A stretch of 63,230 nt of DNA, filler included, from Octopus bimaculoides (taxonomy: Eukaryota): NCBI RefSeq assembly GCF_001194135.2. It is 6 parts of 5 records of this genome, joined end to end, with 100 filler letters (N's around TTAATTAATTAA, not from the genome) between each part and the next. Parts side by side here need not be neighbours in the genome. Positions count along the whole stretch, not along the records: positions 1 to 29,421 come from NC_068984.1; 5 more parts are not named here. One strand, given 5' to 3'. The position numbers were made by a program, and so were the translations under genes. Numbering within the stretch: the first letter of the stretch is position 1; every line of letters starts with the position of its first letter. The notes under the pieces were generated by a model that saw nothing but the letters and a program-made list of their open reading frames with translations, was not told the origin of the DNA and did not search any database. This document shows positions 34 through 25,600 of this stretch, one piece after another.

Positions 34-91
34 CATTATATATATTTATATTCATTTTATATGTATATATATATACACATTATATATATCT

Positions 92-150
92 CTTTTACTC
101 TTTTACACTTTTACTTGTTTCAGTCATTTGACTGCGGCCATGCTGGGGCT
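92..150 (-). mobile_element. SINE 3' tail fragment
   Basis: Reverse complement reads CCCCAGCATGGCCGCAGTCAAATGACTGAAACAAGTAAAA, the same tail as the SINE copies at 32120-32170 and 54710-54755. Confidence 0.7.
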
Positions 151-294
151 CCGCTTATATATACACATTATATATATATATTCATTATATGTATATATAC
201 ATTATATATATTTATATGTATATATGTTATATATATATATATATGTATGTATGTGTACATTATATATATATGCACATATATATGCACATATATC

Positions 295-329
<35 letters not shown>

Positions 330-335
330 TATACG

Positions 336-372
<37 letters not shown>

Positions 373-583
373 TCATGTAATGTGTGGTGATTTTATGGAA
401 AGAAGTCCCATAAGACTCATCAGTTTAGTTAAGAATTGAGAAGACAAGTTGTGAAGTATTATTTTCATATCTTCGCAAATTTACGCCTGTTAACTACCAG
501 CAAAATTTGAAGACTCAACATTAGCAATCTTTTTTGGAAACCTCCAAATTGAAGGAGGAATTTACATTCAACCTTTTTACACC

Positions 584-689: not shown

Positions 690-2627
690 CTTTTACTCAT
701 TTACTCATTTCAGCCATGCAGCCATGGTCATGCTGGAGCACTGCCATGGTCTTGCTGACTTCCTCGGTCTGGGTGTTTTACATCACCACTTCTGTATGTG
801 CCTTTGTCCCAGCTGTTGGCACATTTGGTGTGTAATGGAGTTTGATTCTGCTGTCCTCGTCTGTACCTCATGTTGGGCTGTTGGTTCATCTGGTATTGTG
901 GAGAGGAGGATGTCTAGTTGAAGACATCTGCTTCTACCTTATGCAACTTTCTTAATTTTTGTGGCAGGGCATTGAAGATCTGTGGGCCTTTGAACCCTAG
1001 ACTATTGCAATACCTGCTCCTGAATCTAGATGTAGTGGGTGATACTTTTGGTACAATACAATGGCAGCCAGTTCTGGAATTTGTATAACACTCAATGCCA
1101 AAGTTAGGTACTAGCCCTTCTAGGATTTTCCATATGTATATTATTGCATATCTCTCATGTCTTCACTCCAGGAAGTAAAGCTGTAGTTTTTTCAGCCTGT
1201 CTCTTTAGCTCATCCACTGCACTGTTTCAATCTTTTTAGTGTAGTGGCATTGGACTGCTTCAAGCTCCACTGTTAGTTTGGTACTACGTGGTGACCATAA
1301 CTGGGAGCAGTAGTCCAGGCAGCTGAGAACAAAGGTTCTCCACAGGGTCAACATAGTTTCTTGGTCTCTTGTCTTGAAGGATCTCAGTATCCCTCCTGCC
1401 AGTTGTCTGCACTTTGCTGCCATCTTGCTTATGTGCATATGAAATGATGCGTGATTGTACATACTGATCCCCAAGTCTCCCACTGCCTGTGACTCTGGGA
1501 TTGTAGTGCCTTCAGTTCCTGTAAATGTAGATTGTACTGTACTTGTGAGTTGATAGTGCACTGCTTGAAAATTTACAGCATTAAACTGCATGTTTATTTT
1601 GGCCCGCTTGTATATTGAGTTTAAGTCCTGTTGTAAGCTTGTGACATCATCTTGGTTTTTTTATTGCCTGTGATAATTTTGTATCATCAGCATAACTAGT
1701 GACAGTGGTTGTCCGAGTGACTGTGGGCATGTGTAAGAGGGCTATTATGAACAGTAATAGCCCCAGAACAGTTCCCTGGGAACACCACTTAGGATTTGAG
1801 TTTCCTCAGAAAGGGCGCCATTAGCTGCAACTACCTGACTTCTGTTTTTAAGGAAGTCATGCAGCTACTTTCCCAGTTTACCAACAATGCTAAGGTCTCA
1901 TAGCTTATGACTTATTATGCCATGATCTACCTTACCAAATGCCTTTGTGTAGTCAAGGTATATCATGCTGACATCTGAATGATCCAGCTGTTGTCTCATA
2001 GTGCTGTAGGAGCTGTGTGAGGCAGCTTCTTCCTGGATGGAAGCCATGCTGAGTATTGTTCAGTAGGTCATTATCATCATTATCAACTTCTTTCTGATGA
2101 TTTGCTCCATGACTTTACTGATATGTGAAGTCAGAGAGATTAGCCTGTATTTTTTGGCCTCTGTTCTGCTTCCACCTATGTGGATAGGGCATATAATACC
2201 TTCTTTCAGCTTTTTAGGAAGTATACCACTTGCAAGGAAACTTTGGAAAAGTATCTGAAGTGGTTTTGCTAAAGCCTGCTTACATGACTTTAGGAGAATA
2301 GCTGGGAAGCCATCAGGAACAGTGGCAGAGCATGAGCTCATTTCATCTATGGCTGCTCTTACATCTGTTTTCTCGGTGTTGATGTAATCAATGGCTGGCA
2401 CTTCCTTTTTTAGAGCTGAATTCAACTGGATTACTTATCGGCATGTGTCTAAGTGGGGAAGTGAAGACACTTTTAAATTGTTTACTGAGTATCTCACTCA
2501 TCCTTCCTGGGTCTTCCATCAGTGAGTCATTCCCTTGGAACAAGGGTCCTATTTTATATTGTATTGTGGCTGTTTCCTTTGCAAATTTATAGAAAGCTTT
2601 GGGATTTGTTTTTATGCTTTCCACAGC

Positions 2628-2668
<41 letters not shown>

Positions 2669-2840
2669 TTTCATGAGAGAGTTTGATCTTGCTTTCAGTT
2701 TCTAGGAGCATCCGTGTTAAGATAGACTTCTCTCTATCCTTCAGTTGCCTATTCAGCCGCTTTGAGATCTTTGACCTGCATCTCATAAGGATTTTTCTGT
2801 CCCTGGGAATCTAGTTTGGCAGTGCACTGGCCTTTCTTTC
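690..2840 (-). mobile_element. Decayed CR1/L2-like LINE (RT domain to 3' end), 5'-truncated
   Basis: Minus-strand ORF pieces: PDGFPAILLK...YRLISLTSHISKVME (RT N-terminus), LTLWRTFVLSCLDYCSQLWSP and LDILLSTIPDEP (RT C-terminus). Multiple stops and frameshifts; a (GA)n expansion at ~2632-2662. Confidence 0.9.
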
Positions 2841-3176
2841 TGAGATGTATTTAGTGCATATAGCTTGCACTGTTGACATAAACTGGCTAAGTTTCAGATA
2901 TTGTATATATAGATATATTCATATATNNNNNNNNNNNNNNNNNNNNNNNNNNNNNNNNNNNNNNNNNNNNNNNNNNNNNNNNNNNNNNNNNNNNNNNNNN
3001 NNNNNNNNNNNNNNNNNNNNNNNNNNNNNNNNNNNNNNNNNNNNNNNNNNNNNNNNNNNNNNNNNNNNNNNNNNNNNNNNNNNNNNNNNNNNNNNNNNNN
3101 NNNNNNNNNNNNNNNNNNNNNNNNNNNNNNNNNNNNNNNNNNNNNNNNNNNNNNNNNNNNNNNNNNNNNNNNNNNN

Positions 3177-3211
<35 letters not shown>

Positions 3212-3989
3212 TATGTATGTATATCTGCCTGTATGGAATATGTGAAATGTACCCATGTATACAAATATCATAAGGATAAATATACGTACATGTAGATGAA
3301 TGTAATGGTTAGTGGAAAATGCATATGTTTGCGAATATGCTTGTGTGTGTATGTGTGTGTGTGTATATATGCATGTGAGGGTGAGTGTATATACACATAT
3401 ATGTGTGAATGTGTGTGTGTGTATATATGTACACACATACACATACACACATATATACATACATATATATTATATCTACATACACATATTTATATATATA
3501 TATGTGTGTGTGTGTGTACATATAGACATATATTCATACATATACATGTATATATGATCCCGTGCTCCTTGTTTGTATCCAAACAAAATCTACACAGAAA
3601 CAATCATATTTATACCTCTTCTCCACCACCACTACCATCACCAAATTGAATCTTGTTGCTTCTGTCTTTATATGCAGTAGTGATGCAAGCATTTGTTCAC
3701 GCAGCATACTTAAACATTGTTTTGAACTCTTCCATTTCATAGAACTGTATAAAACCTTACCTACTCCCCGACTATGGAGCTATGGTAATCAATTCGTCAT
3801 CATCATCATCATCTACGTCATCATTATTGTTGTTGTTTTTGTTATTATTATTATTATTATTAAATCTGCTGCAGGAATCATTACTGCTATGTAGTATGTT
3901 TTTTTGTTTCAAGTTTTCAGCTCTGTTTTATCCTTGGGTGGAACAAGACAAATAAAAACAACAACAAAAACAAAGTAAACTTGTTGGGT

Positions 3990-7638: not shown

Positions 7639-8294
7639 NNNNNNNNNNNNNNNNNNNNNNNNNNNNNNNNNNNNNNNNNNNNNNNNNNNNNNNNNNNNNN
7701 NNNNNNNNNNNNNNNNNNNNNNNNNNNNNNNNNNNNNNNNNNNNNNNNNNNNNNNNNNNNNNNNNNNNNNNNNNNNNNNNNNNNNNNNNNNNNNNNNNNN
7801 NNNNNNNNNNNNNNNNNNNNNNNNNNNNNNNNNNNNNNNNNNNNNNNNNNNNNNNNNNNNNNNNNNNNNNNNNNNNNNNNNNNNNNNNNNNNNNNNNNNN
7901 NNNNNNNNNNNNNNNNNNNNNNNNNNNNNNNNNNNNNNNNNNNNNNNNNNNNNNNNNNNNNNNNNNNNNNNNNNNNNNNNNNNNNNNNNNNCACATACAG
8001 AACTTTTCCTATAGTGTACTAACGATCTGGTATAATTGCTCACGTGTTATTGACTCTCTTCCTATCTGCTGTAATATTTCTCATACACACATGTATCACT
8101 CACATACACACTTTTCTTTGTATGACGGCCTGTCTTTGATTATGTTCTTATATGTCGCATTCACACTCTCACACAGACATACATCTTTAACGCCACAATA
8201 AATATCTCTGTTATTCATCTTATACGGTTGTGGTCTTTCATTGCTGGTCATCTATGTTATCGTCGCATAACATATCATCTATATCATCTTCGAT

Positions 8295-8400: not shown

Positions 8401-10777
8401 TGTTCAAGCATTTTGACTCACTTTGACATGTTTCACTATCTTTGTAAACAAGGGGATCATTCATCCAGTGATTTGTTTCCAATTCTCCTCATAAATATGC
8501 CCAAGCTATTTGTTGGTTGAGAGACTGGGAGATTATCTCATTTGGAAACATGTGCTGTAGGCTGTAAAAGCTTCCTCTAGCTTGGCTTCTGGTTTTTCTG
8601 CATCTTGCTGGGCTTTGCTCAGCTTTAAGTGTAGAGCCAACACCATTCTCTATAAATACAATGGCATAAAACTTGCCACATCACAATCAGCCTCATTTTT
8701 GTCACCCTTGTTGCAGCATCTCCCTCACCACTAAATAGTTTTATCGCTTCCTTGCCCAACATATTTTCTTGGTTAAAATGGCTTGAGTGGAAATAGGTGA
8801 ACAGCAGAAAATTATTTAATCCTTTCCTTAGCCATGGTTCTTCAACATCAAGACTCTATGGAGCTTGTGTAGAAGAAAGCACAGGGTTCCATCATGAACA
8901 AGTGGATTAAATGGACGTCTATCTACAGTTATGGAAAAATCACTCTGCCTGCCTTACTCATGTGAATTTACGCCTTCCAGTTCAAAGGTACTTTCTGCAA
9001 ACCTCCTCCAACAGCTACTTCTGTTCATCATCCTAGCTGGCTACCTCCACTTGCTATCTCAGCTCACAACATCACTGACTGAACCATATCTGGAGTTGCT
9101 TGCCAAATTGGTTCTTGTGCTAGTTTTCTTCTTCTCATCACATGGGTAATTATAACTTTAATTGAAATTTTGGAGTTTTTGCCCCTATGTGTCCTAAACA
9201 GATTCAACCATTGAGACAGTGCTTTCTTTTCACTTCAACAAGAGGCTTGATTAATTAAAAGATTCTGCTCACTAATTTAACTATGATTACACTTTCAGTA
9301 TTCAACAGTTGCTTTCACTCCTCTGTATGACAAATGTAAACAGAGAGACAAAATACATATAGACATAATCTTTATTCATAATCCACACTGTCTTGGTACT
9401 CATATAATTGCAGAGCCATATGTATTCTATTTATTATGTAAATTAATTGTGTCAAGAACAGTTTCTTTTCTGTTTTAATAAATAACCTTCAAATACTTCA
9501 TTTCAAACATTTTGTGGAAAGGAAGTAAACAAGCCCTTGCGAGCAATAGAGACATGAAACTGACTCATCCCAAATGCCAAAAAGGCCCTTATGTGTCTAA
9601 TTTTTCAGGGAAAATAAATACATATGGATACAGCTACTTCTATTTATTTATTTATAATCTACAGCTTGATTCTAATTGATTTCATAAAGTAAAAATGAAA
9701 TTCCTTTTAATTTTTCTTTTTATATAAATTATTGAATGACTCTGGAATAAGAAGATTATTAAGAAATACTCTATAAACTTTGTCAAAATATTCACCTAGG
9801 TTACTCTCAATATTACTTTGTTTCAGTATTTCCTGGTTTTGAGTTGAAATAGTTTGCTTCCAATATTGTATCAATTTGTTTAAACAATTATCTCAAATAC
9901 TTAGTTTTTATATCATTTATCATAGATGTCAGACTAAGTTAACTTTGCAATATTACTGAATATAATCACTGCCATGATGTTTTATCTGTATATTCATTAT
10001 TTCTTTAAATACATGTACAGTAGTTAACATTATATCATGTTTCAAAACAATACATTATGAATAAGTAAAATCATGTTTAAATAATATACAACAGATTAAA
10101 ATATAGAGTACAATTCCTTAATTTCCAATTCTGAAATAACTACACAATGACTTAATTTAGTTAAACATCTATATTTATCCAACACCCTATTGGAAAAATT
10201 ATATATCATACCAAAGAGCTTATACATTAATCCTTTGTAAGAAAACCTAGCATTGCTCTAAAATATTTTTGAGAGTTATAGCTCCTAGAAAAACAGTTGT
10301 TGTAACAGCTGAAGAACTGTGATCTAGATCTACCTAGATCCCATTCTACTGATATATTTTTGATATTAATTGATGTATATAATCTGAGAGAGTATGTTTC
10401 ATATTGGTGGGATTTGAACTCTGAATGTAAGTGAAATAACTATTATTGCAAAGCATTTTGTTCATAATGTTTGCCAATCTGAAATATATTACTCTATAAT
10501 TACTTTGATTAGATGTCAATAACTTAATTATAATTTTCAAAAGAAAGGATACAGAGACAATTACTTAATTTCATTTTTAATATGAAACAATTTTGATAAA
10601 ATCTACATTTAACTTTTATTACATACAATTTAAGAAACTTTGTAAAAGAAAGAAAACTTGAAGATAATGTAATATATGAGAAAGGTTTATTTATTCCAAT
10701 ATTTCTATTGTCCAGATAAATAAAATATAATTACAATATTCCATAGAATATCATCCTTACCATTACAAAAATATAAT

Positions 10778-11098
10778 TTAAAAGATAATGTCAAGCTGTT
10801 CATCATGACCTACAGGATTCCCACAGTGATCACAACAAACTCCATTTTGACAATGAGTTTTGCTCAAATGATGCAGAGGAATAGGGTAAAGACGACACTC
10901 AGGTAAACATGAGGTACATATTAATGCCATTCTAATCTCTTCTGGACGATATATTTCACCACAATAGCCACAGACATAAAGTGAGAATGTCAAATGCTCA
11001 TCACTGCTTCTGACTCTGTAACACCTTGTACAAAATTCTCGTTGATGCATTGACAGCAAACCTGGAGGACGACAACACCTAAGAGAATAATCTTCCAT
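10778..11098 (-). CDS. Uncharacterised 106-aa Cys/His-rich protein with four CxxC motifs (probable zinc-binding), in a terminal exon
   Basis: Intact ATG-to-TAA ORF with TCAAA-ATG context; 13 Cys and 7 His; CxxC at residues 23-26, 43-46, 61-64 and 89-92. Upstream acceptor has a CTAAC branch point (11180-11184), a T-rich tract and TAG, so the exon starts at 11151. AATAAA on the minus strand at 10686-10695. Confidence 0.6.
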   Translation of the reverse strand: MEDYSLRCCRPPGLLSMHQREFCTRCYRVRSSDEHLTFSLYVCGYCGEIYRPEEIRMALICTSCLPECRLYPIPLHHLSKTHCQNGVCCDHCGNPVGHDEQLDIIF

Positions 11099-12516
11099 TT
11101 TGAGAGGTTTTTCCTACTATTGATTTCAGTTTGGGATGCAAAAGTTACAACCTATCAAATATTAAAATATAAAGAGTGAGTTAGCATTTTATATTTATGT
11201 ATAACCTATAGAGTGTATAAATGTATATCTCAAGGACATGCTATCTGAATAGGCAAGGTAGTTATTTAAGTATAAAAAGTAAGTGAATTTCAATTCATTC
11301 TAAAGATGCAAATTCATTATATGAATTCAGTGTATATTTCCATAAATGGCTAATATTTTATTATCAGAAAGACACAATTTTTTTCTACCTTCTAAATTAA
11401 ATTAATATACAAGGCATAACACATGTATAATTGCTATGAGCCAGAAATAAACGAGCATGTGTGTTTACATTATATTTACCTGTGTAAATTTATGAGGGAC
11501 ATTTTTATTCCATTAGAGCATACAAAATAGTAATAAGGAATATGTGTATGCAAGCATGTATTGCATCATATAAATGTGAGAACTTAAATCCCATTGATGA
11601 GTGAAAATATTTACTTCATAGAGGATACAACACAACATAGATATAGTAAGCTACTATTCCTTTCATTTATGTTCTTAAGTTATTTGAAGCTCAAGAAACC
11701 TAGTTTCAAACACTTCAGACTTGACTGAAAACAAAAGTAATATGAAAAAAAGATAAGGGAAAATGAAGTTATACTGATTATATAATGAAAGAGCTTCCCA
11801 CTGATACTATTTTCAATATAGCTTTCTTCTAATAGTATCAGCTTTTGAGCATACATATACAAGTATATGAGCTTGAGCTGGTATATATCACTTTTCTATC
11901 TGTCTGACTTTAATGTGAATATAACAAATACCTGACATTATATTGGTTTGGAGTTTTAGATATGTAGAAAGATTGTTTACAAAAAGATGGTTGTTATATA
12001 CACAGCCAATATCCACACCTTAACTCAATCTTTCAATTTAACAAATTTAAAACTTTATCTTATCCAACTATCTATCTAGCTATTGGGCTGTAAATGTGTG
12101 TTATTCATTGTTTGTATATGCCTGTTTCAGTTGCTGAAGATAAGCAGGATAATTGCTACGGTTATCTTATTGAGGCAGAAATGTGTTCACTACTCTCCTC
12201 TTGCCTCAAGACTCACATTTTTGGAATTCTTGATTCCCTTACTCATTTAGAGTTGGTACCAACTGCCACCAAATAATAAAGTTCGTGTTCTCTAGAAGCA
12301 GACTTAATTTCAATAAATTAAGAATTTATTGGGTAGGTAATTTAATATAACATTATTTGTCTTTGTTATTCAAATACATGTCACTGCCCATTCTGAGTTG
12401 TTTTTTACATACATATTTATACAAATATATACACAAATATACATACATACATACATATATATACACACACACACGTATAAAGAGAGAGAAAGCAATCATA
12501 TATTATATTATATTAT

Positions 12517-12975
12517 TGGCACCTGTACCAGTGGAGCACTAAGAGCACCGTCTGAGCATGTTCATTGCCAGAGCAGCTGTCTGGATTCTGTCCCAGCGGC
12601 ACATAAATAGTACCATTTGAGCGTGATCATTACCAGTGTCACCTTACTGGCACTTGTGCCGGTGGCACATGAAAAAACATTCAAGCAAGGTCGTTGCCAG
12701 TGCCACTGGACTGGCTCCTATGCAGGTGGCACATAAAATACACCATTTTGAGCGTGGCCATTGCCAGTACCGCCTGACTGGCCTTCGTGCCGGTGGCATG
12801 TAAAAGCACCCACTACACTCTCGGAGTGGTTGGCTTTAGGAAGGGCATTCAGCTATAGAAACTCTGCCAAATCAGATTGGAGCCTGGTGTAGCCATCTGG
12901 TTCGCCAGCCCTCAATCAAATCATCCAACCCATGCTAGCATGGAAGGCAGACGTTAAACAATGATAATGATGATG
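12517..12975 (+). mobile_element. Abundant interspersed repeat with RTE-like tail ending in (GAT)n
   Basis: Shares the core GCACCCACTACACTCTCGGAGTGGTTGGC...AGGAAGGGCA...CCAACCCATGCTAGCATGGAA...ACGTTAAAC with the copies at 22781, 29522, 35395 and 39310. Confidence 0.85.
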
Positions 12976-13818
12976 CTGATTATATTATATTATGTGTAGT
13001 CAAGTAGGATATCCCAAAGTATAACAATATCTGTTTCAACACGATTTCACATCAAGAATATTGCAAAACAAATACATAAACATGTGTGTGTATACTGTCT
13101 GTCTGTCATCATCATCATCATCATCATCATCATTTAACATCCGCCCTTCATGCTGGTAGGATTTTTACAACTGGATACCCTTCCTAACACAAACCACCAA
13201 ACAGAGTGGACTTAGAGCTTTTTACATGGCACAAGTACAAGTGAGGTCGGTTTTGGTAAGGTTTTTACAGCTGGATGCCCTTCCAAATGCCAACCACTTT
13301 ACAGAATGGACTATATGCTTTTTAAGGGAAACTGAAATTCTTATATAATATTAAAATTGTAATGGCTGGAGAAATGCATGCTTTTAGTAAAGAATGATAA
13401 ATTCACTTACGAGTCTAGAAAATTAATTATAGTTTACTTAAAAGAAATATTACAAATATATAATGCAAGACAATTTTAACATGGCCTATTCTAATTTTTA
13501 TTTCAACCCTCATAGATTAATAAAAATTAGACCAATATTGATTTGTAACATAGACACAATGCCTGTATCTATTAAATTAATCCAAATACTTATTTTATCT
13601 ACCCAAGGAGGATGAAAAGCTCTTGATGGGATTTGAACTCAGTATATAAAATGATAATAAATAAGGAACTTATTGTACACAAAGCTTAGGTTCACCACAT
13701 ATTGCTCTATCTATTTTGTCAACATCCAAATCACATTCACTTTTCAAATAAACATTACACCAAAAAGTTTGGAGGAATGGATCAGTTGATTATATTAATC
13801 CCAGGATTGGACTAGTAT

Positions 13819-14294: not shown

Positions 14295-15310
14295 AATTAT
14301 TAGAATCTGATAGAATACTAACTATAGAAATGAAAAGGAAAATTGAGAAATAGTACATCAGAAGGGTGAGGAAGCTAATGAAGTCAGAGCTAAATAGTCT
14401 GAATCTAGTGAAGGCTACAATTCTTGGGAAGTGTCATTACTTAGATTCTCAGCAGCTTTTGTAGATTGGACAAAAACTGAATTACCAAAGCTAGACAGAA
14501 GAACTAGGAAGGAATTCAATATGAATGGAGGACTCCACACAAGGTCAGGATTATACTTACCAAGATTATACTTACCTAGTAAGATTATACTTACCTAGAA
14601 AGGAAGGCGGAAGAGGGTTAATATCAGTAGAAGACTGTGTGGAGTTAGCTAGAGTAGATATAGACTCCTATGTAGGTAATAGTGAAGAAAATTTATTAAA
14701 AGCTGCTAGAGACATAGGGAAGCCAAAAACCAAATGAGGTTAAAAACCAGAAAAAAGAACAGAAGTTATCTGACTAGCAGAAGAAGGCTTTGCACGATAT
14801 ATTCCCAAATACAGTTGCAGCAAATAGTAGTAGTGAGACATGGATATGGTTGCAGAAAAGAAGGCTGTAAAGGGAGACAGAAAGTTTGTTAGTAGCAGCA
14901 TAAGATCAAGTATTAAGGACTAATTGGATAAAAGCCAAGATAGACAAAAAACAAGCAGATTCCCAATGTAGGCTATGCAAATCAAAAGAGGAATGCATTA
15001 CTCATATAGTAAGTGAATGTAGCATGCTGGCACAGAAAGAATATAAGAAAAGACATGACAACCTAGAGAGAGTAATCCACTGGGAGTTATGTAGAAAGCT
15101 AGGATACTGATAAATGGTATGAACATGAACTTAGTAAAGTACTAGAAAATAAGAAATATAAGATGTTGTGAGACTTTAACATTCAGACTGACAGAGTAAT
15201 AGAAAGGCAGTGCCAGATAGATGACTTTACAGCCCCAAATGATGAAAAAATCAATATGAGAGGTATAGTAAAAATAGCAAAGTACCAGGACCTAGCTATT
15301 GAATTACAGG
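14295..15310 (+). mobile_element. Second R4/Dong-like copy (RT C-terminus, CCHC finger, start of RLE)
   Basis: RLYLPRKEGGRGLISVED, CRLCKSKEECITHIVSEC...KRHD, DFNIQTDRVIE and AKYQDLAIELQ motifs, with stops. Confidence 0.85.
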
Positions 15311-16060
15311 GGTTTTTAAAGCATTTGTATGGTACTGATACTTCAAATGCAGCCCAGATTGAATTGAGGATGTTCTGAAGTGCAGTATTGACATCCCCAG
15401 AATTGTAAAATTCAGACCAATTTGGGTGTTGTAACTCTGTATGGTAACAGTTCCAGTCTGCTTTTTTCCAATCTAAGAGAGCAGTTTTGGAGGTGATGAG
15501 GCTTCCTGTTTCTGCCCATAAGATTGGCAATGATCATAGCATGATCAGACTCACATAAAGGTTCCTTGGTAGTGACACCGATAACCATTTCTGGAGTAGT
15601 GGTAAAGAGCATGTCCAAAGGTTTGTTACCTCTTGTGAGGGAGGTGACTACTTGGGTCCAGCTTGAATCTAGCACTACATCAAGGAAATCATTAGCACTT
15701 TGCAGTCAACAAAATATTTCCCAATGAAAACATAAGTGGCTGTTTTTCTAGATGTAGCTTTGAGGATGTCAAAACGCTGTGTGTCTTGATAATTTGGTAG
15801 GCAGTAAACAACTCCAAGTACCAGTGGTGACATATTTATGCATATATCACAATAAAATAACTCTTGTAATTGATTCAAATTATCACAAGGAATTGCTGAA
15901 AAGTATGATGGAATATAGGCCTTCACACCACCCCCACAACAATTAACTCAATCTTTGCGAAACAGGTTGTAACCAGCTAAAAACACCATCGCAAAGTAAA
16001 GAGTGCACCCATGTTTCTGTGACTGTGATGAAATCATGTTTGAAAGTTTTGATGTAAGAG
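15311..16060 (-). mobile_element. LINE AP-endonuclease region remnant (CR1/L2-like)
   Basis: Minus-strand motifs DFITVTETW, GYNLFRKD (after a frameshift), LGVVYCLPN and TRGNKPLDMLFT...SDHAMI. Confidence 0.8.
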
Positions 16061-16420: not shown

Positions 16421-16769
16421 GTTCTTTTTTTCATCATAGATTTATTTGTATGGGATAGAGAAAGACTAATGTCTCTGTCACTATTACGATTACACCGAGA
16501 CCTATAACATTATAGAGTCAAAGAGGTGGATCTTGATGCATAAACTTCAGGCATTTAAGGACAGTAATTTGAATCTGGATTTAAGCCTATCATGATGATA
16601 TATAGGGGATGGTGGATTGTTCTTGTTTAGTTTCCCAGAGTTTTTTCATTGTAGCCTATTGTGGAGATACTATCCACAGACAAGCTAGTATTTCACAAGA
16701 CTTAAATTTCAATTTTAGTCTGTTATTGTGGATGAAAGACAATATCATACTTATAACGTCACAGACTTT

Positions 16770-16975
16770 TACCAAAATACTCTCTCTCTCTCTCTCTCTC
16801 TCACTCTCTCACTCACTCACTCACTCACTCACTCACACACACACACACACACACACAGAGGAGGTGGAGTTCTTTTAATTTCTGTCTACGAAATCCACTC
16901 GCAAGGTTTTGTTCGACCCAGGGCTTTAGTTAAAGACACCTTTCCAAGGTGTCACACAGTGAAACTGAACTTCAA
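16770..16975 (-). mobile_element. SINE fragment (family of the 31850 copy) with CT/CA microsatellite
   Basis: Reverse complement matches CTTGG...GTCTT...CCAAAGCCTTGTGAGTG...GTAGACGGAAA of the 31850 copy. Confidence 0.6.
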
Positions 16976-17789
16976 ATTTTCAAAATTACTTTATAAATTT
17001 TAGTTTATATTTTTTTACTGAAATATTTACCTCATAACAAGAGAAATACGCATTCAAAGAACTTTTCTGAGCAAAGTAAAACAGAAAATGATGGAGAAGA
17101 AGGAAATTATTTGAAACATGAAAAAAATATTACTTTTGCCGACATAATCGCAATCTAGACCAACTTATCTTTATCCAAAGATAAATTAATCTTTAGATTA
17201 TTTCATTTCAAAAATATGCATTTTTAATGAAGTTACGAGGAAATAAATTCAAGTAGGTGTAAACACGTCCGAACTTTGATGCTCTAACGATATTGAAATA
17301 TAAGAGATGTTTACATTTTAATAAAAAATGTTTGAATTAAAAAAAAAAAACGTTTTTATAAAAGGTACTCAAAGCGAAACGGGAAAATGAAAATGTTATC
17401 TTTTCATTCTCTTATGCATGTTTTCTCTATATCAGCATCGTCGTTCAATTCTAGGTTTTTTAGTAATCAATCTAATTTAATTAACATAATACTAAATGAA
17501 AGGAAAGAATTTTATTACACAAATATAGACATGTTTCAGAAGTTTACCCAGACTTTGATTTTAAAATATCATACAATGTAATATATATTAGTAATCTTTA
17601 CAAGAAAAATATTAGATACCTCACACTTCTTTTGGAAATATTCTTAATGTCAAGAATACGAAATACGTAAATTTTAAATCATGTAACTGGATTCAAGATT
17701 AAAAAGAAATTTGGGTTAGATAAAAAAAAAACATCTGCTCGATTAACAGTAATAAGTAATACTTGATAGTTGTAAAAAAAAATGTTAAG

Positions 17790-18199: not shown

Positions 18200-19818
18200 C
18201 GATTTCTTTATTGTCCACCAGGGGCCAACATAGACGGTACAAACAATATTGAGGAACTAAAATTATAAAACGGAGGCATAAAGAAAGAAATAAAATTAAA
18301 AGAAACGAATGAATCATGAAAAAGATGATATAATGAGGTGGAATGCCCACTCGACCCCCGAAGTCGAGTGGTTACATTGAAACCGTTTTGCCGTTCAGTC
18401 ATATATATCTAAAATCCAGCAGTTCAATACCATAGTCTTTTTTTAATTCGGTATAACAAGTCTGTTTTGGCAATTTCTGTCTATCCCCGATCACCTTCCA
18501 CAACTCAATACCTTTATCATTCTTTTTAACTATTTCCATTTGTGCCTTATTTAACAATTAGCATATCATAGTCTCACCATCTTCACCCCAGAATTCCAGT
18601 TCAACCACATCCTTCCACTCGTTCACCCGGTTTACAATCCTTCACGTCCACATACAGAACGCAAGCAAAACAAACAGGGGGAGGGGGAACCATATCTACA
18701 TCATGTGTGCTTGCATTTCTTTTCTGTTTTGTTGTTGGAGGGGAATAGGTAGGTTTGGTGTCTGCATGGGGAGGGTGTGGTGAAAAGGGAGAGGGTGGGT
18801 TGGGGTTCACAAGTACTTTCCTTTTTTTCTTCTTTTTTTTTTCTCCTCCGGGCTATTTCCCATTCCCTATCTTCTAATACTGGAGTTTCTTTTTCTACTT
18901 CTTGTATCCTCTCTTCTGGTGTTGGCTGTCGCTCTTCTACCATTTTGGGTGGTGGAGGGCAGTTCACTCTTATGTGGCCTTTCTGGCCACATTTAAAACA
19001 GCGAGGAATCCTGCCCTCCACCCACACTTTTAAGCTCAAATCACCAATCCATAGGTTTTCTGCTAATCCTTCCAACATCTTCATACTAGCCTGCACAGTC
19101 ATTTCAATAATCTTTCCTTTCCATACTGTACCATCTGTCACTTCAGCTTGTAAAACCGTGACTTCCTTCACCTTTTCTATGAGGAGGGCCGCCACAACCC
19201 AAGCCTCATCAATTTCTGGTAGAACCCCTTCAACTTTTATTTTTGCTATCCTCTTACCCATATAAGACTGTCTTATCAGTTTTTTTAATATTTTGGCTGC
19301 ATTGGCTACTGCTTTACTGTTCTATAATGCACATTTCCAGTTCCATATTTGCTTCCTCTGGCCAGATAGATGATATCTGGCCAGACCACCACTAGTGCCT
19401 TATCAATCTCACTTTCCTCCACATGATCCACTCTCCTTTTCTCTACGGAGTATACCTGGTATACTACCGTCTTCCTTTGCATCTCCTCCATTTTAGCCTG
19501 AGGTGGGGAAAGCCTTACGTCATTCCCCACCCTTACTGCCATTTTACAGTCCTCTTTTAAGTTCATTAAATTCACTGACCTTTGCTGCCTCTGCAAAGCT
19601 TTTTCTTTTAAATTTTCATCCATCCTTTTGATAGCCCTGACCTGTTCCTCCTCTAAAGAGGACAATTCTGTTTCACTGGGGTCCAAACATATATGACTTC
19701 CACTCGCTATCTCTCAGTATCACTGAGAGACAGCACAGCAACTCAAAAACCGCTGCAAACACAGCACAAACAAATACACAATATAGTCAAACAAACAAGC
19801 TTGTACAACTCACAGAGG
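18200..19818 (-). mobile_element. ORF1-only (gag-like, CCHC knuckle) L1/Tx1-type non-autonomous retroelement
   Basis: ORF pieces 19306-19686 and 18701-19261, including VWVEGRIPRCFKCGQKGHIRVNCP. No endonuclease or RT between ORF1 and the tail. Flanked by a CGAAATAC direct repeat (18192-18199 and 19819-19826). Confidence 0.75.
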
Positions 19819-19869
19819 CGAAATACTGCCAAGTATTTCGCCTGACGTGCTAACGTTTCTGCCAGCTCG
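19819..19869 (-). mobile_element. tRNA-derived SINE, 5' part
   Basis: Reverse complement CGAGCTGGCAGAAACGTTAGCACGTCAGGCGAAATACTTGG is an A-box-containing head that joins the 18027-18199 part. Confidence 0.8.
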
Positions 19870-20045
19870 AAATTATATTAATAATGATACAACTGGGATA
19901 GAGCTTGGGCAGCTTTGTATTTTCCCATCCAGTTTTACAAGAAAACCAAGATATACGTATAAGAAAATACACGATACCATGACTTGCCTGTAATTATGGA
20001 CGTCCTGCTATTTTCATCACTTTTACTTGCAATGCTAAAGGAAAC
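19870..20045 (+). mobile_element. Helitron Rep-region remnant, right part
   Basis: INNDTTGIELGQLCIFPSSFTRKPRY...NYGRPAIFITFTCN matches the Helitron Rep motif ILPSSFTGSPRYM...YGRPDLFITFTCN. Confidence 0.8.
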
Positions 20046-20239
20046 GGAAACATATATGAAATTTTTATTTTCATATATAACATAAACATCTACATCTTTT
20101 AGAACATTGTTATTTTATAAAATTTTGCTGGCAAATTTTTAAATTAACGTAAACATTTATTTACATGAAAGAATATTACAGGAGAACTTCCGTCTTATTC
20201 TTCCAAATCTTTCTCTTAAAACTGTATTGAAACCATTTG

Positions 20240-21300
20240 TGGGTTTTTTTTTTTATCACAGCAACTTGTCGCACACCACAAGGTTTAACAGAACCTTCTG
20301 AAGCAAGCCAGCACACTCGCAACATTGCCATGGGCGATGGTGAGGCTAAGGTGTTGGGAAAGCCAAGCACCCTCACAGGCATCGCCTGACACCTCGGTTA
20401 GTGGCCCAGTCCCTCCAAACATCTCCAACGCCACAGGTTGGAAGAGATAGTTCACTGTCAGGTTCTGATACTTCAGGGTTTTCTTCCGTTGGGCTACAGA
20501 AGCATTAACTGAAGCATCCAGGGTGTGGGAGGGAGCAAAGGAGTTGCAGACTGTGGTATCCCAAATGAAGCCCCTACCTCTAACCCAGGGACAGAGGATA
20601 AGACCAACTGGTCTCTTTGCATCACTTCTGGATAACCCTGATGGCTCCAGAACTGAGGGGATATTAATCCGAGCCAGTGTCTGCTTAATGATTAGGTTTA
20701 GCTCGGTGTGGTGAGTGAAGCAACCAGAATTTAGGTGGCAACACAGACTGTGAAGACCTGTGGGGTCAAGAGGCCTACTACAGTGGCATCTCAGTCCCCT
20801 GCAGACGTCAGCTCCCACTTTGAGTGCGATGGAGGTGCAGAGTTCATCTAGACTGAGTAGACTTCCAATGTTGGCCACAAACAGTCCCCTGAGAATTTTG
20901 CACTAGCTGAAAGTAGGCAACACCTTGAAAATTGATCAGATTGATCAAGGAGAGAGTTGAAAGTGGCATCTGAACATAGATTGTCCTATACTCTCTGTTT
21001 CCGTCTGTCCTCCACTGTAACTGGAATTGACAAACCCATCTCTCTCCACTGTGATAGAGCTTCATCCATCTCCCTGTTGGAATTAGTCCATGTTGGAGAA
21101 GAGAGGATGTTGCCTACCAAGCATAGATGGAGGAAAGAAAACAGGGAAGAGGTAAAGGCAAGCACTTGTGCAGACTTAGATCCCAAACCATTTGAGCAAA
21201 GCAGCTTGGTCACGGGAGTCTGGGGAGAGTTTGACATTGACCAAATATTCAAGTTTCCTGAAGATTAGGTCATCAAAGTATTGGAGGGATGACAGGAATC
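20240..21300 (-). mobile_element. CRE-clade non-LTR retrotransposon 3' part (RT thumb, zinc finger, RLE)
   Basis: ORF 20285-20878 contains CHCSRPLDPTGLHSLCC...HHTELN and KRPVGLILCPWVRGRGFIWDTTV...FQPVALEMFG. Confidence 0.85.
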
Positions 21301-22780: not shown

Positions 22781-23290
22781 ATCATCATCATCATCATCAT
22801 CATCGTTTAACATCCATCTTCCATGCTAGCATGGGTTGGACGATTTGACTGAGGACTGGCGAACCAGATGGCTGCACCAGGCTCCAATCTGAACTGGCAG
22901 AGTTTCTACAGCTGGATGCCCTTCCTAACGCCAACCACTCTGAGAGTGTAGTGGGTGCTTTACATGCCACCGGTACGAGGGCCAGTCAGGTGGTACTGGC
23001 AACGGCCACGCTCAAAATAATGTTTTTTACATGCCACCTGCATAGGAGCCAGTTCAGCGGCACTGGCAACGACCTCGCTCGAATGTCTTTTCATGTGCCA
23101 CCGGCACAAGTGCCAGTAAGGTGACGCTGGTAATGGTCACGCTCAAACGGTNNNNNNNNNNGTGCCAGTAAGGTGACGCTGGTAATGGTCACGCTCAAAC
23201 GGTGCTATTTACATGCCACTGGCATGGAAGCCAGACAGCTGCTCTGGCAATGATCACAAGCGCTCCACTGGCACAGTTGCCAGTCATCGA
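22781..23290 (-). mobile_element. Interspersed repeat with RTE-like tail (same family as 12517)
   Basis: (CAT)n tail at ~22782-22803, then the reverse complement of the family core. Contains a 10-N gap with duplicated flanks. Confidence 0.85.
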
Positions 23291-25270: not shown

Positions 25271-25600
25271 CTGATACGGAATATTCTCGCTGGTTAGTTC
25301 TGACTGTTGCTCGTGGTGGAAACATCCACTCAAACAGGGTCGAGATAAAACCGAGTGTGTNNNNNNNNNNGTTAGTTCTGACTGTTGCTCGTGGTGGAAA
25401 CATCCACTCAAACAGGGTCGAGATAAAACCGAGTGTGTTGATATTGGTGTGTACCTGGTGGTGGGTTTGCTGGCGCACAACATTGTGGTAGACAGTACAT
25501 TGGTGGTGAAGACGTCAGCGCTGGAACTGGCTGTAGCTGTGTTCTGTATGTGTGGTCAGCGACCAGACCTGTGAGAGATCTGAAATCGAAGACAATTGCC
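25271..25600 (-). other. Putative first exon of unit B with three ATGs in three frames
   Basis: Lies downstream of promoter B and ends in the consensus donor TATCAG|GTAAAT (exon end 25271). ATGs at 25500, 25483 and one in the region duplicated by assembly. The frame from 25483 is open to the donor (MLCASKPTTRYTP...ENIPYQ). Confidence 0.5.

What the first reader, a model, noticed from the sequence alone, without database searches (positions are those of the whole stretch)
10778..11151. Orphan spliced terminal exon encoding a 106-aa four-CxxC protein
Seen: an intact ORF in AT-rich DNA where neighbouring ORFs are decayed. It has CTRC-x16-CGYC-x14-CTSC-x24-CDHC, an apparent internal repeat (C-T-x-C...H...C-x-x-C-G twice), a strong acceptor with branch point 53 nt upstream of the ATG, an in-frame upstream stop, and AATAAA about 85 nt after the stop. 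It does not match the spacing of RING, LIM, PHD, B-box, LITAF or GATA fingers as I recall them. Inference: a lineage-restricted double zinc-ribbon-like protein, possibly domesticated from a virus or Polinton-type element.
Basis: partly seen in the sequence, partly recalled or inferred. Interest (0 to 1): 0.7.

Follow-up and report, generated by a model that had tools for sequence, protein, structure and literature searches.

The report
Octopus-only small cysteine-rich protein gene
The flagged stretch is a real, selectively maintained gene for a 106-residue cysteine/histidine-rich (probably zinc-binding) protein, found so far in only two closely related octopus genomes; it matches no known protein family and shows no sign of viral or transposon origin.

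Summary
The ORF exists on the minus strand at 10778-11098.

It is more than a chance ORF. The only homologue among about 15 billion proteins is a 91%-identical protein on four short-read contigs that align colinearly with window 10401-11949. Against that copy, 15 of 25 coding changes are synonymous (dN/dS 0.15). In 20,000 simulations using the flanks' own mutation spectrum, none reached 15. The ORF has no indels, and GC by codon position is 0.48/0.44/0.25.

No Pfam, PDB, PHROG or viral-contig match was found. AlphaFold confidence was too low (pLDDT 43) to give a fold.

Residues 61-82 fit the pattern C-x2-C-x12-H-x4-H, and residues 45-82 resemble atypical fingers of one fly zinc-finger protein. 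That match was picked after the fact, and a canonical C2H2 profile scores no better than shuffled sequence.

The acceptor-like AG at 11153-11152 and the AATAAA at +83 are present but occur at about 1 per kb per strand, so splicing is unproven. The internal repeat is not supported, and nothing supports a Polinton or viral origin.

Verdict: a lineage-restricted orphan gene, probably zinc-binding, already present in UniRef as a predicted protein. Modest interest.

The parts
10778..11098 (-). Complete coding sequence (ATG at 11098-11096, TAA at 10780-10778) of a 106-aa Cys/His-rich protein. It has four CxxC knuckles at residues 23-26, 43-46, 61-64 and 89-92. Residues 61-82 fit C-x2-C-x12-H-x4-H.
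   Evidence: ORF listed. Compared with the 91%-identical P0001, dN/dS is 0.148 with 15 synonymous and 10 non-synonymous changes and no indel. A neutral simulation gave P(>=15 synonymous) of 0/20000. GC1/2/3 is 0.48/0.44/0.25. The start context is AAAATGG.
11099..11151 (-). Putative 5' untranslated part of the exon. It has no ATG and three in-frame stops, so the reading frame cannot be entered from upstream.
   Evidence: Sequence. The nearest upstream ATG is at -89, window 11187.
11152..11185 (-). Acceptor-like signal: CTAAC (11185-11181), an A/T-rich tract, then AG (11153-11152). It is unverified and no better than the background rate.
   Evidence: equal or better sites occur 1.0 per kb per strand. 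The signal is conserved in L001, but the whole neighbourhood is equally conserved.
10686..10695 (-). Two overlapping AATAAA hexamers, 83 and 87 nt after the stop. They are possible poly(A) signals.
   Evidence: AATAAA occurs 1.3 per kb per strand in the window. Conserved in L001.
10401..11949 (-). Block that aligns colinearly, without a splice-like gap, to the Logan contigs L001-L004 from a related genome. Flank identity is 86-89% and ORF identity is 92%.
   Evidence: The contig ends beyond the block have no counterpart anywhere in the window.

Best explanation
Window 10778-11098 (minus strand) is a single-copy, lineage-restricted ('orphan') protein-coding gene of an octopus. Its whole 106-codon reading frame lies in one exon. 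The product has no signal-peptide-like N-terminus, so it is presumably intracellular.

Shown:
- The ORF and its motifs.
- Restriction to two close genomes.
- Purifying selection on the protein.

Inferred:
- The eight cysteines in four CxxC knuckles, plus five more Cys and seven His, most likely hold two or three zinc ions.
- The product is therefore a small zinc-stabilised module that works by binding another macromolecule (protein or nucleic acid), as such modules generally do.
- The most likely ligand sets are Cys4 from knuckles 1+2 (spacing x16, like a zinc ribbon or rubredoxin knuckle pair), and either Cys2His2 (C61, C64, H77, H82) or Cys4 from knuckles 3+4.

Unresolved: whether the mRNA is spliced onto an upstream non-coding exon at 11151.
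For: - ORF and motif spacing.
- Homologues: only P0001 (91% identity over the full length) in 5.8 billion clusters and in an exhaustive phmmer of 1.84 billion representatives.
- Locus: P0001 lies on four identical contigs that align colinearly to window 10401-11949.
- Selection: 15 synonymous against 10 non-synonymous changes, dN 0.041, dS 0.27, dN/dS 0.148. Non-synonymous divergence is 4.0% against 11.9% in the flanks (Fisher p=7e-5). With the flanks' own mutation spectrum, the mean is 5.2 synonymous changes of 25, and none of 20,000 runs reached 15.
- Differences by codon position 1/2/3 are 7/4/14.
- The ORF has no indel, while I counted about 11 indel events in the flanks by eye in the alignment.
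- All 13 Cys and 7 His are kept, and the amino-acid changes are conservative.
- GC1/2/3 is 0.48/0.44/0.25, against flank GC of 0.24-0.28.
- The start context is AAAATGG, and there is no upstream ATG back to 11151.
- The exact protein is already in UniRef, so a gene model exists.
- The window is octopod: a transposon-like ORF in it has its best hit in Octopus vulgaris.
Against: - The comparison is with a single genome and rests on 25 substitutions.
- No transcript or peptide evidence could be obtained.
- Zinc binding is inferred from motifs only. No curated family matches and the AlphaFold model is unusable (pLDDT 42.7; Foldseek found nothing).
- Retention of all Cys and His is not significant on its own. 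By my hand estimate, 10 random replacements would miss all 20 positions about 12% of the time.
- dS (0.27) is higher than the flank distance (about 0.13), which is unexplained. It may be sampling noise.
- Both ends of the related contigs are non-homologous to the window, so orthology of the locus beyond the 1.55-kb block is not demonstrated.
Confidence: 0.6

Rival explanations
1. The protein is a strongly diverged, shortened offshoot of the C2H2 zinc-finger gene family, which is massively expanded in octopuses. On this reading, knuckle 3 plus H77/H82 is a surviving Cys2His2 finger and the other knuckles are finger remnants that lost their histidines. This concerns origin and fold, and is compatible with the best explanation.
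For: - Residues 61-82 fit C-x2-C-x12-H-x4-H.
- C61 to C89 is exactly 28 residues, the canonical finger period (read).
- Residues 45-82 align without gaps, at 32-38% identity, to three atypical N-terminal fingers of P0005, 'zinc finger protein 93-like' of the fly Eurosta solidaginis. hhalign gives probability 93%.
- The low-confidence model places strands at 58-60 and 69-71 and a helix at 75-80, which is a beta-beta-alpha order.
- C2H2 expansion in octopods is documented (PMC7656900, PMC12513265).
Against: - Pfam zf-C2H2 and related models give no hit even at E<=10.
- An HMM built from ten canonical fingers of P0005 scores the protein at -8.7 bits, below 73-78% of shuffled versions.
- P0005 was picked as the best of 1.84 billion proteins, so its pairwise statistics are post hoc. 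Two of the other listed hits (P0003, E 4.8e-9; P0004, E 3e-4) are plainly spurious repeat matches.
- A profile search with the joint alignment found nothing further.
Confidence: 0.2
2. The ORF belongs to, or was captured from, a mobile or virus-like element (Polinton, other transposon or endogenous virus).
For: - The window is rich in retroelement remnants: zf-RVT at 14904-15107, and a zinc-knuckle gag-like ORF at 18701-19261.
- The 1.55-kb block shared with L001 is bounded on both sides by sequence that does not match between the two genomes.
Against: - No relative in IMG/VR viral contigs.
- No significant PHROG match (best E 0.21).
- No homologue of any kind beyond P0001 in about 15 billion proteins.
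- No second copy in the window.
- No inverted or long direct repeats around the block.
- No viral or Polinton hallmark domain in any neighbouring open frame between 4 and 16 kb.
- Purifying selection is acting on the protein.
- De Bruijn contigs are expected to end inside lineage-specific repeats, which explains the unmatched ends.
Confidence: 0.07
3. It is the last exon of a larger coding gene, entered through a different acceptor inside the ORF (for example TTCTCTTAG|G at codons 4-7). The ATG at 11098 would then not be the true start.
For: - An AG|G preceded by a short pyrimidine run lies at 11080-11079.
- The gene sits in a large gap-containing eukaryotic scaffold where distant upstream exons are possible.
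Against: - The ATG has a good context and is the first ATG after 11151.
- The first seven codons are identical in the two genomes, and the start and stop positions are the same in both.
- The UniRef entry is exactly these 106 residues.
- A competing AG lies just upstream of the internal site.
Confidence: 0.08
4. It is a chance ORF that is not a functional gene. It stays open in two close genomes only because little time has passed.
For: - Under neutral change, the frame would still be stop-free in about 20% of simulations.
- ORFs of this length are not rare in the window.
- There is no expression evidence.
Against: - The excess of synonymous changes was never reached in 20,000 neutral simulations.
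- Non-synonymous divergence is a third of flank divergence (p=7e-5).
- Both the differences and the GC content show three-base periodicity.
Confidence: 0.05

Closest known systems
Zinc-ribbon / rubredoxin-knuckle modules (e.g. TFIIB/TFIIS-type ribbons, Pfam zinc beta-ribbon clan)
   Same: Both have pairs of CxxC knuckles 14-24 residues apart in a small protein. The first pair (C23/C26...C43/C46, x16) has the spacing typical of such ribbons. The weakest-of-noise Pfam hit is a rubredoxin domain (PknG_rubred, E=1.6).
   Different: No significant profile match. The protein carries five extra Cys and seven His, and no fold is confirmed.
Classical C2H2 zinc fingers, including the atypical N-terminal fingers of Eurosta solidaginis 'zinc finger protein 93-like' (XP_067634645.1, P0005)
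   Same: Residues 61-82 fit C-x2-C-x12-H-x4-H. There is a gap-free 37-38-residue alignment to three P0005 repeats, and a 28-residue period between knuckles 3 and 4.
   Different: It fails the Pfam C2H2 models and a canonical-finger HMM. Knuckles 1, 2 and 4 lack the histidine pair, and the protein has no TGEKP-type linkers.
Taxonomically restricted (orphan) genes of octopods described in genome papers (PMC7656900)
   Same: No homologue outside a narrow octopus lineage, a short single-exon CDS, and a location in repeat-rich AT-rich DNA.
   Different: Here purifying selection is demonstrated for the individual gene, and the product has a clear metal-ligand pattern instead of being featureless.

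Membership tests
Zinc ribbon (zinc beta-ribbon clan) | Two CxxC (or CxxH) knuckles separated by roughly 10-30 residues | tested here: met
   C23-x2-C26-x16-C43-x2-C46 and C61-x2-C64-x24-C89-x2-C92
Zinc ribbon (zinc beta-ribbon clan) | Significant match to a curated ribbon profile | tested here: not met
   Pfam scan at E<=10 returned only PknG_rubred (E 1.6) and DUF7479 (E 4.7). PDB sequence searches were not significant.
Zinc ribbon (zinc beta-ribbon clan) | Three-stranded beta-sheet fold with knuckles facing one metal | tested here: inconclusive
   AlphaFold2 mean pLDDT 42.7. Foldseek against PDB gave best E 3.8.
C2H2 zinc finger | C-x2-4-C-x12-H-x3-5-H ligand pattern | tested here: met
   Present once: C61, C64, H77, H82. 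Absent from the other three knuckles.
C2H2 zinc finger | Profile similarity beyond the ligands | tested here: not met
   No Pfam C2H2 hit. An HMM of ten canonical fingers scores -8.7 bits, below most shuffles. Only a post-hoc match to the atypical fingers of P0005 exists.
RING / LIM / PHD / B-box / GATA / LITAF fingers | Match to the family profile and ligand spacing | tested here: not met
   None of these Pfam models was reported at E<=10. By my reading of the motif spacing, no C-x-H-x2-C or H-x2-C element sits in the required places.
Polinton / virus-derived gene | Detectable relative in viral sequence collections | tested here: not met
   IMG/VR scan found no confirmed relative. Best PHROGs E was 0.21. 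The exhaustive protein search found no viral hit.
Polinton / virus-derived gene | Neighbouring hallmark genes (polymerase, integrase, capsid, ATPase) or terminal inverted repeats | tested here: not met
   The open frames scanned between 4 and 16 kb give only a weak zf-RVT. There are no inverted repeats in 8-14 kb.
Transposon ORF | Multiple dispersed copies | tested here: not met
   No second copy in the window. There is one two-member cluster in about 15 billion proteins. Whole-genome copy number was not testable.
Orphan (taxonomically restricted) protein-coding gene | No homologue outside a narrow lineage | tested here: met
   The limit is that only annotated or called proteins were searched, not cephalopod genome DNA.
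Orphan (taxonomically restricted) protein-coding gene | Evidence of selection on the encoded protein | tested here: met
   dN/dS 0.148. No neutral simulation out of 20,000 reached the observed synonymous excess.
Orphan (taxonomically restricted) protein-coding gene | Transcription and translation | not testable with these tools
   The Logan contigs are colinear with the genome and their library type is unknown.

The most novel reading that the evidence does not exclude
The protein founds a previously undescribed zinc-binding fold or family that arose within the genus Octopus or its close relatives, either de novo or by divergence beyond recognition. It would be kept by selection for an octopus-specific role.
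Probability: 0.3. Interest if true: 0.45.

Novelty: new variant of a known kind. Interest (0 to 1): 0.3.

Why it matters
Octopus genomes carry many lineage-specific genes, and it is usually unclear whether they are real. This is a compact case in which an orphan ORF can be shown, from sequence alone, to be under protein-level selection and to carry a metal-ligand pattern that fits no catalogued finger. If expression and structure confirm it, the gene would add a new small zinc module to the catalogue. It would also give a tractable example for studying how such genes arise in cephalopods. It does not bear on a long-standing open question, and the predicted protein is already in public databases as an unnamed entry.

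Tried and rejected
- Pfam, PHROGs and PDB sequence searches, with a single sequence and with a profile: nothing significant. The best PDB hit was an arterivirus nsp1-alpha zinc-finger chain, 3ifu_A, at E=0.021. The alignment is weak and I treat it as chance.
- AlphaFold2 on the two-sequence alignment: pLDDT 42.7. Foldseek against PDB gave only noise.
- Exhaustive phmmer: apart from P0001, the hits are repeat-driven artefacts (P0003, P0004) and the fly zinc-finger protein P0005.
- Joint profile of residues 38-88 with the P0005 repeats, searched against 5.8 billion clusters: no hit.
- Canonical C2H2 HMM test: no better than shuffles.
- Internal repeat test: E=6.7.
- Exact look-up of the window's own protein on assembled contigs: none on record.
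- Literature search for the SRR accessions, to learn the species and library type: nothing relevant.
I scanned a selection of the open frames of at least 55 codons instead.
- tRNA and Rfam scans of the window: empty.
- A ZAR1/RTP-type '3CxxC' resemblance recalled from memory: dropped, because Pfam reported no such family.

Full report
**1. What is there.**

On the minus strand, window 11098-10778 is an ATG-to-TAA reading frame of 106 codons. The product is MEDYSLRCCRPPGLLSMHQREFCTRCYRVRSSDEHLTFSLYVCGYCGEIYRPEEIRMALICTSCLPECRLYPIPLHHLSKTHCQNGVCCDHCGNPVGHDEQLDIIF.

In total the protein has 13 Cys and 7 His. The N-terminus is polar, so it does not look like a signal peptide. This is my reading of the sequence, not a tool result.

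Several sequence features around the ORF can be read directly:
- The 53 nt between 11151 and the ATG hold three in-frame stops and no ATG.
- The ATG context is AAAATGG.
- An AG|G lies at 11153-11152/11151, with CTAAC at 11185-11181.
- AATAAA follows the stop at +83 and +87.

**2. Is it more than chance?**

ORF length alone is not informative. The window has 31 ORFs of at least 90 aa, most made by microsatellites, assembly gaps or transposon remnants. The splice and poly(A) signals are not informative either. Acceptor-like sites at least as good occur 1.0 per kb per strand, and AATAAA occurs 1.3 per kb per strand.

The comparative evidence is decisive. The only homologue in 5.8 billion protein clusters is P0001, which is 91% identical over all 106 residues. 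It is encoded on four identical contigs assembled from sequencing runs SRR11869385, SRR11869390, SRR11869391 and SRR11869394. These contigs align colinearly to window 10401-11949.

Identity and indels differ between the flanks and the ORF:

| Region | Identity | Indels |
|---|---|---|
| Upstream flank | 89% | several |
| Downstream flank | 86% | several |
| ORF | 92% | none |

Inside the ORF, 15 of the 25 changes are synonymous. That gives dN 0.041, dS 0.27 and dN/dS 0.148. I placed 25 substitutions at random, using the substitution spectrum seen in the flanks. The mean was 5.2 synonymous changes, and none of 20,000 runs reached 15.

Further signs of coding:
- Differences fall 7/4/14 on codon positions 1/2/3.
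- GC is 0.48/0.44/0.25 on the three codon positions, against 0.24-0.28 in the flanks.
- All Cys and His are retained and the replacements are conservative.

Retention of all Cys and His would happen about 12% of the time by chance, by my hand estimate, so I do not lean on it. The conclusion is that the ORF has been kept as a protein since the two genomes split.

**3. Where it comes from.**

A transposon-like ORF elsewhere in the window (20288-20878) has its only hit in Octopus vulgaris.

The exact 106-aa protein is already in UniRef, so a gene model exists. It is not on record on any assembled contig in the look-up collection, whereas P0001 is. The four runs therefore come from a different genome, not from a paralogue in the same one.

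I could not learn their species or whether they are DNA or RNA libraries. All four contigs share the same 5' end, or are offset by 12 nt, and they end in two shared 3' positions. This points to graph breaks at repeats and not to transcript ends.

The first 144 nt and the last 205 nt of L001 have no counterpart anywhere in the window. I read these as lineage-specific repeats in which the contigs terminate, but this is an inference.

**4. What the protein is.**

No curated family matches:
- Pfam at E<=10 gives only noise: PknG_rubred at 1.6 and DUF7479 at 4.7.
- PDB sequence searches give nothing significant.
- PHROGs gives nothing significant.
- A scan of IMG/VR viral contigs gives nothing.

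An exhaustive phmmer of 1.84 billion representatives returns P0001, two repeat-driven artefacts and P0005. P0005 is 'zinc finger protein 93-like' of the fly Eurosta solidaginis.

Residues 45-82 of the octopus protein align without gaps to three atypical N-terminal fingers of P0005, at 32-38% identity. hhalign gives a probability of 93%. Residues 61-82 also fit C-x2-C-x12-H-x4-H, and knuckles 3 and 4 are 28 residues apart, which is the C2H2 period.

However, P0005 was the best of 1.84 billion proteins, so these statistics are post hoc. Rescaled to the size of the library, the best single stretch is not significant. Three further tests also failed:
- Pfam's C2H2 models do not hit.
- An HMM of ten canonical fingers from P0005 scores the protein below most shuffled versions.
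- A joint profile search found nothing more.

The AlphaFold2 model is unusable (pLDDT 42.7) and Foldseek returns noise. The claimed internal repeat is not significant (E 6.7).

**5. Mechanism I commit to.**

The product is a small intracellular protein held together by two or three zinc ions. One site is formed by knuckles 1+2 in a ribbon-like way. Another involves knuckle 3, either with H77/H82 (C2H2-like) or with knuckle 4. Such a protein would act by binding another macromolecule.

The gene and the selection on it are shown. Metal binding, ligand pairing and the binding role are inferred from general knowledge of CxxC modules.

**6. Rivals.**

- **Diverged C2H2 offshoot.** This is compatible with the above. 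I give it about 0.2.
- **Mobile-element or viral origin.** I give it about 0.07. There are no relatives and no second copy in the window. There are no terminal repeats. No hallmark domains lie nearby; the neighbours hold only retrotransposon remnants.
- **Last exon of a longer CDS, entered through an internal acceptor.** About 0.08.
- **Chance ORF.** About 0.05, given.

**7. Splicing.**

The 'spliced terminal exon' claim cannot be decided here. The in-frame stops show that the coding sequence is self-contained. Any upstream exon would be non-coding, or else the gene has its own promoter.

**8. Novelty and interest.**

Lineage-specific genes are numerous in octopods (PMC7656900), and this predicted protein is already deposited without a name. 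What is new is the evidence that it is under selection and that its Cys/His pattern fits no catalogued finger. Interest is modest (0.3). It is a new variant of a known kind, namely small CxxC zinc-binding proteins and orphan genes.

Noticed in passing
window 1205-2786 (-): Three successive ORF pieces (1205-1591, 2060-2425, 2388-2786) look, from memory, like parts of a non-LTR retrotransposon reverse transcriptase. They are split into three pieces, so the reading frame is interrupted at least twice. Pfam gave no hit at E<=0.01.
   Followed up: partly
window 14398-15947 (both strands): A cluster of short open frames lies on both strands. One of them (14904-15107, +) matches zf-RVT, the zinc-binding tail of reverse transcriptases, at E=1.1e-4, below Pfam's cut-off. 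It looks like nested, fragmentary LINE remnants about 3.8 kb from the gene.
   Followed up: partly
window 18701-20878 (-): Three consecutive ORFs lie on the minus strand. One is a 186-aa ORF with a CCHC zinc knuckle (PF00098, E=2.7e-5). Another is a 197-aa ORF whose only database relative is a hypothetical protein of Octopus vulgaris (68% identity over 39% of its length). This is probably a retroelement remnant, and it identifies the window as octopod.
   Followed up: partly
window 12605-12805: Three tandem copies of a 64-70-nt unit, 69-74% alike, each with an internal GC-rich palindrome-like core (CCAGTG...CACTGG / GGTGGCAC). Nature unknown.
   Followed up: no
window 10404-10430 and 13623-13649: A 27-nt direct repeat (85% identity) that reads on the minus strand like a degenerate tRNA 3' end (GAGTTCAAATCCCACCA). 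The homology between the window and contig L001 stops exactly at its end, at 10401. ARAGORN finds no tRNA.
   Followed up: partly
L001 1-144 and 1758-1962: Both ends of the related contig lack any counterpart in the 29-kb window. The 5' piece ends in ...GTTGAGAACCACTGC, which is reminiscent of a SINE. These are presumably lineage-specific repeat insertions where the assembly graph breaks.
   Followed up: partly
window 61-439, 3296-3649, 12341-12610, 16606-17000: TA/CA-type microsatellite-like arrays produce long spurious ORFs rich in Y, I, H, T and C. Assembly gaps (runs of N) lie at 2927-3176, 7639-7991, 23152-23161 and 25361-25370.
   Followed up: yes
window 10778-11098 vs flanks: Synonymous divergence inside the ORF (dS 0.27, transitions:transversions 20:6) is about twice the flank divergence (about 0.13, ts:tv 71:74). 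This may be sampling noise on 65 sites, or it may reflect constraint or alignment effects in the flanks. It is unexplained.
   Followed up: no
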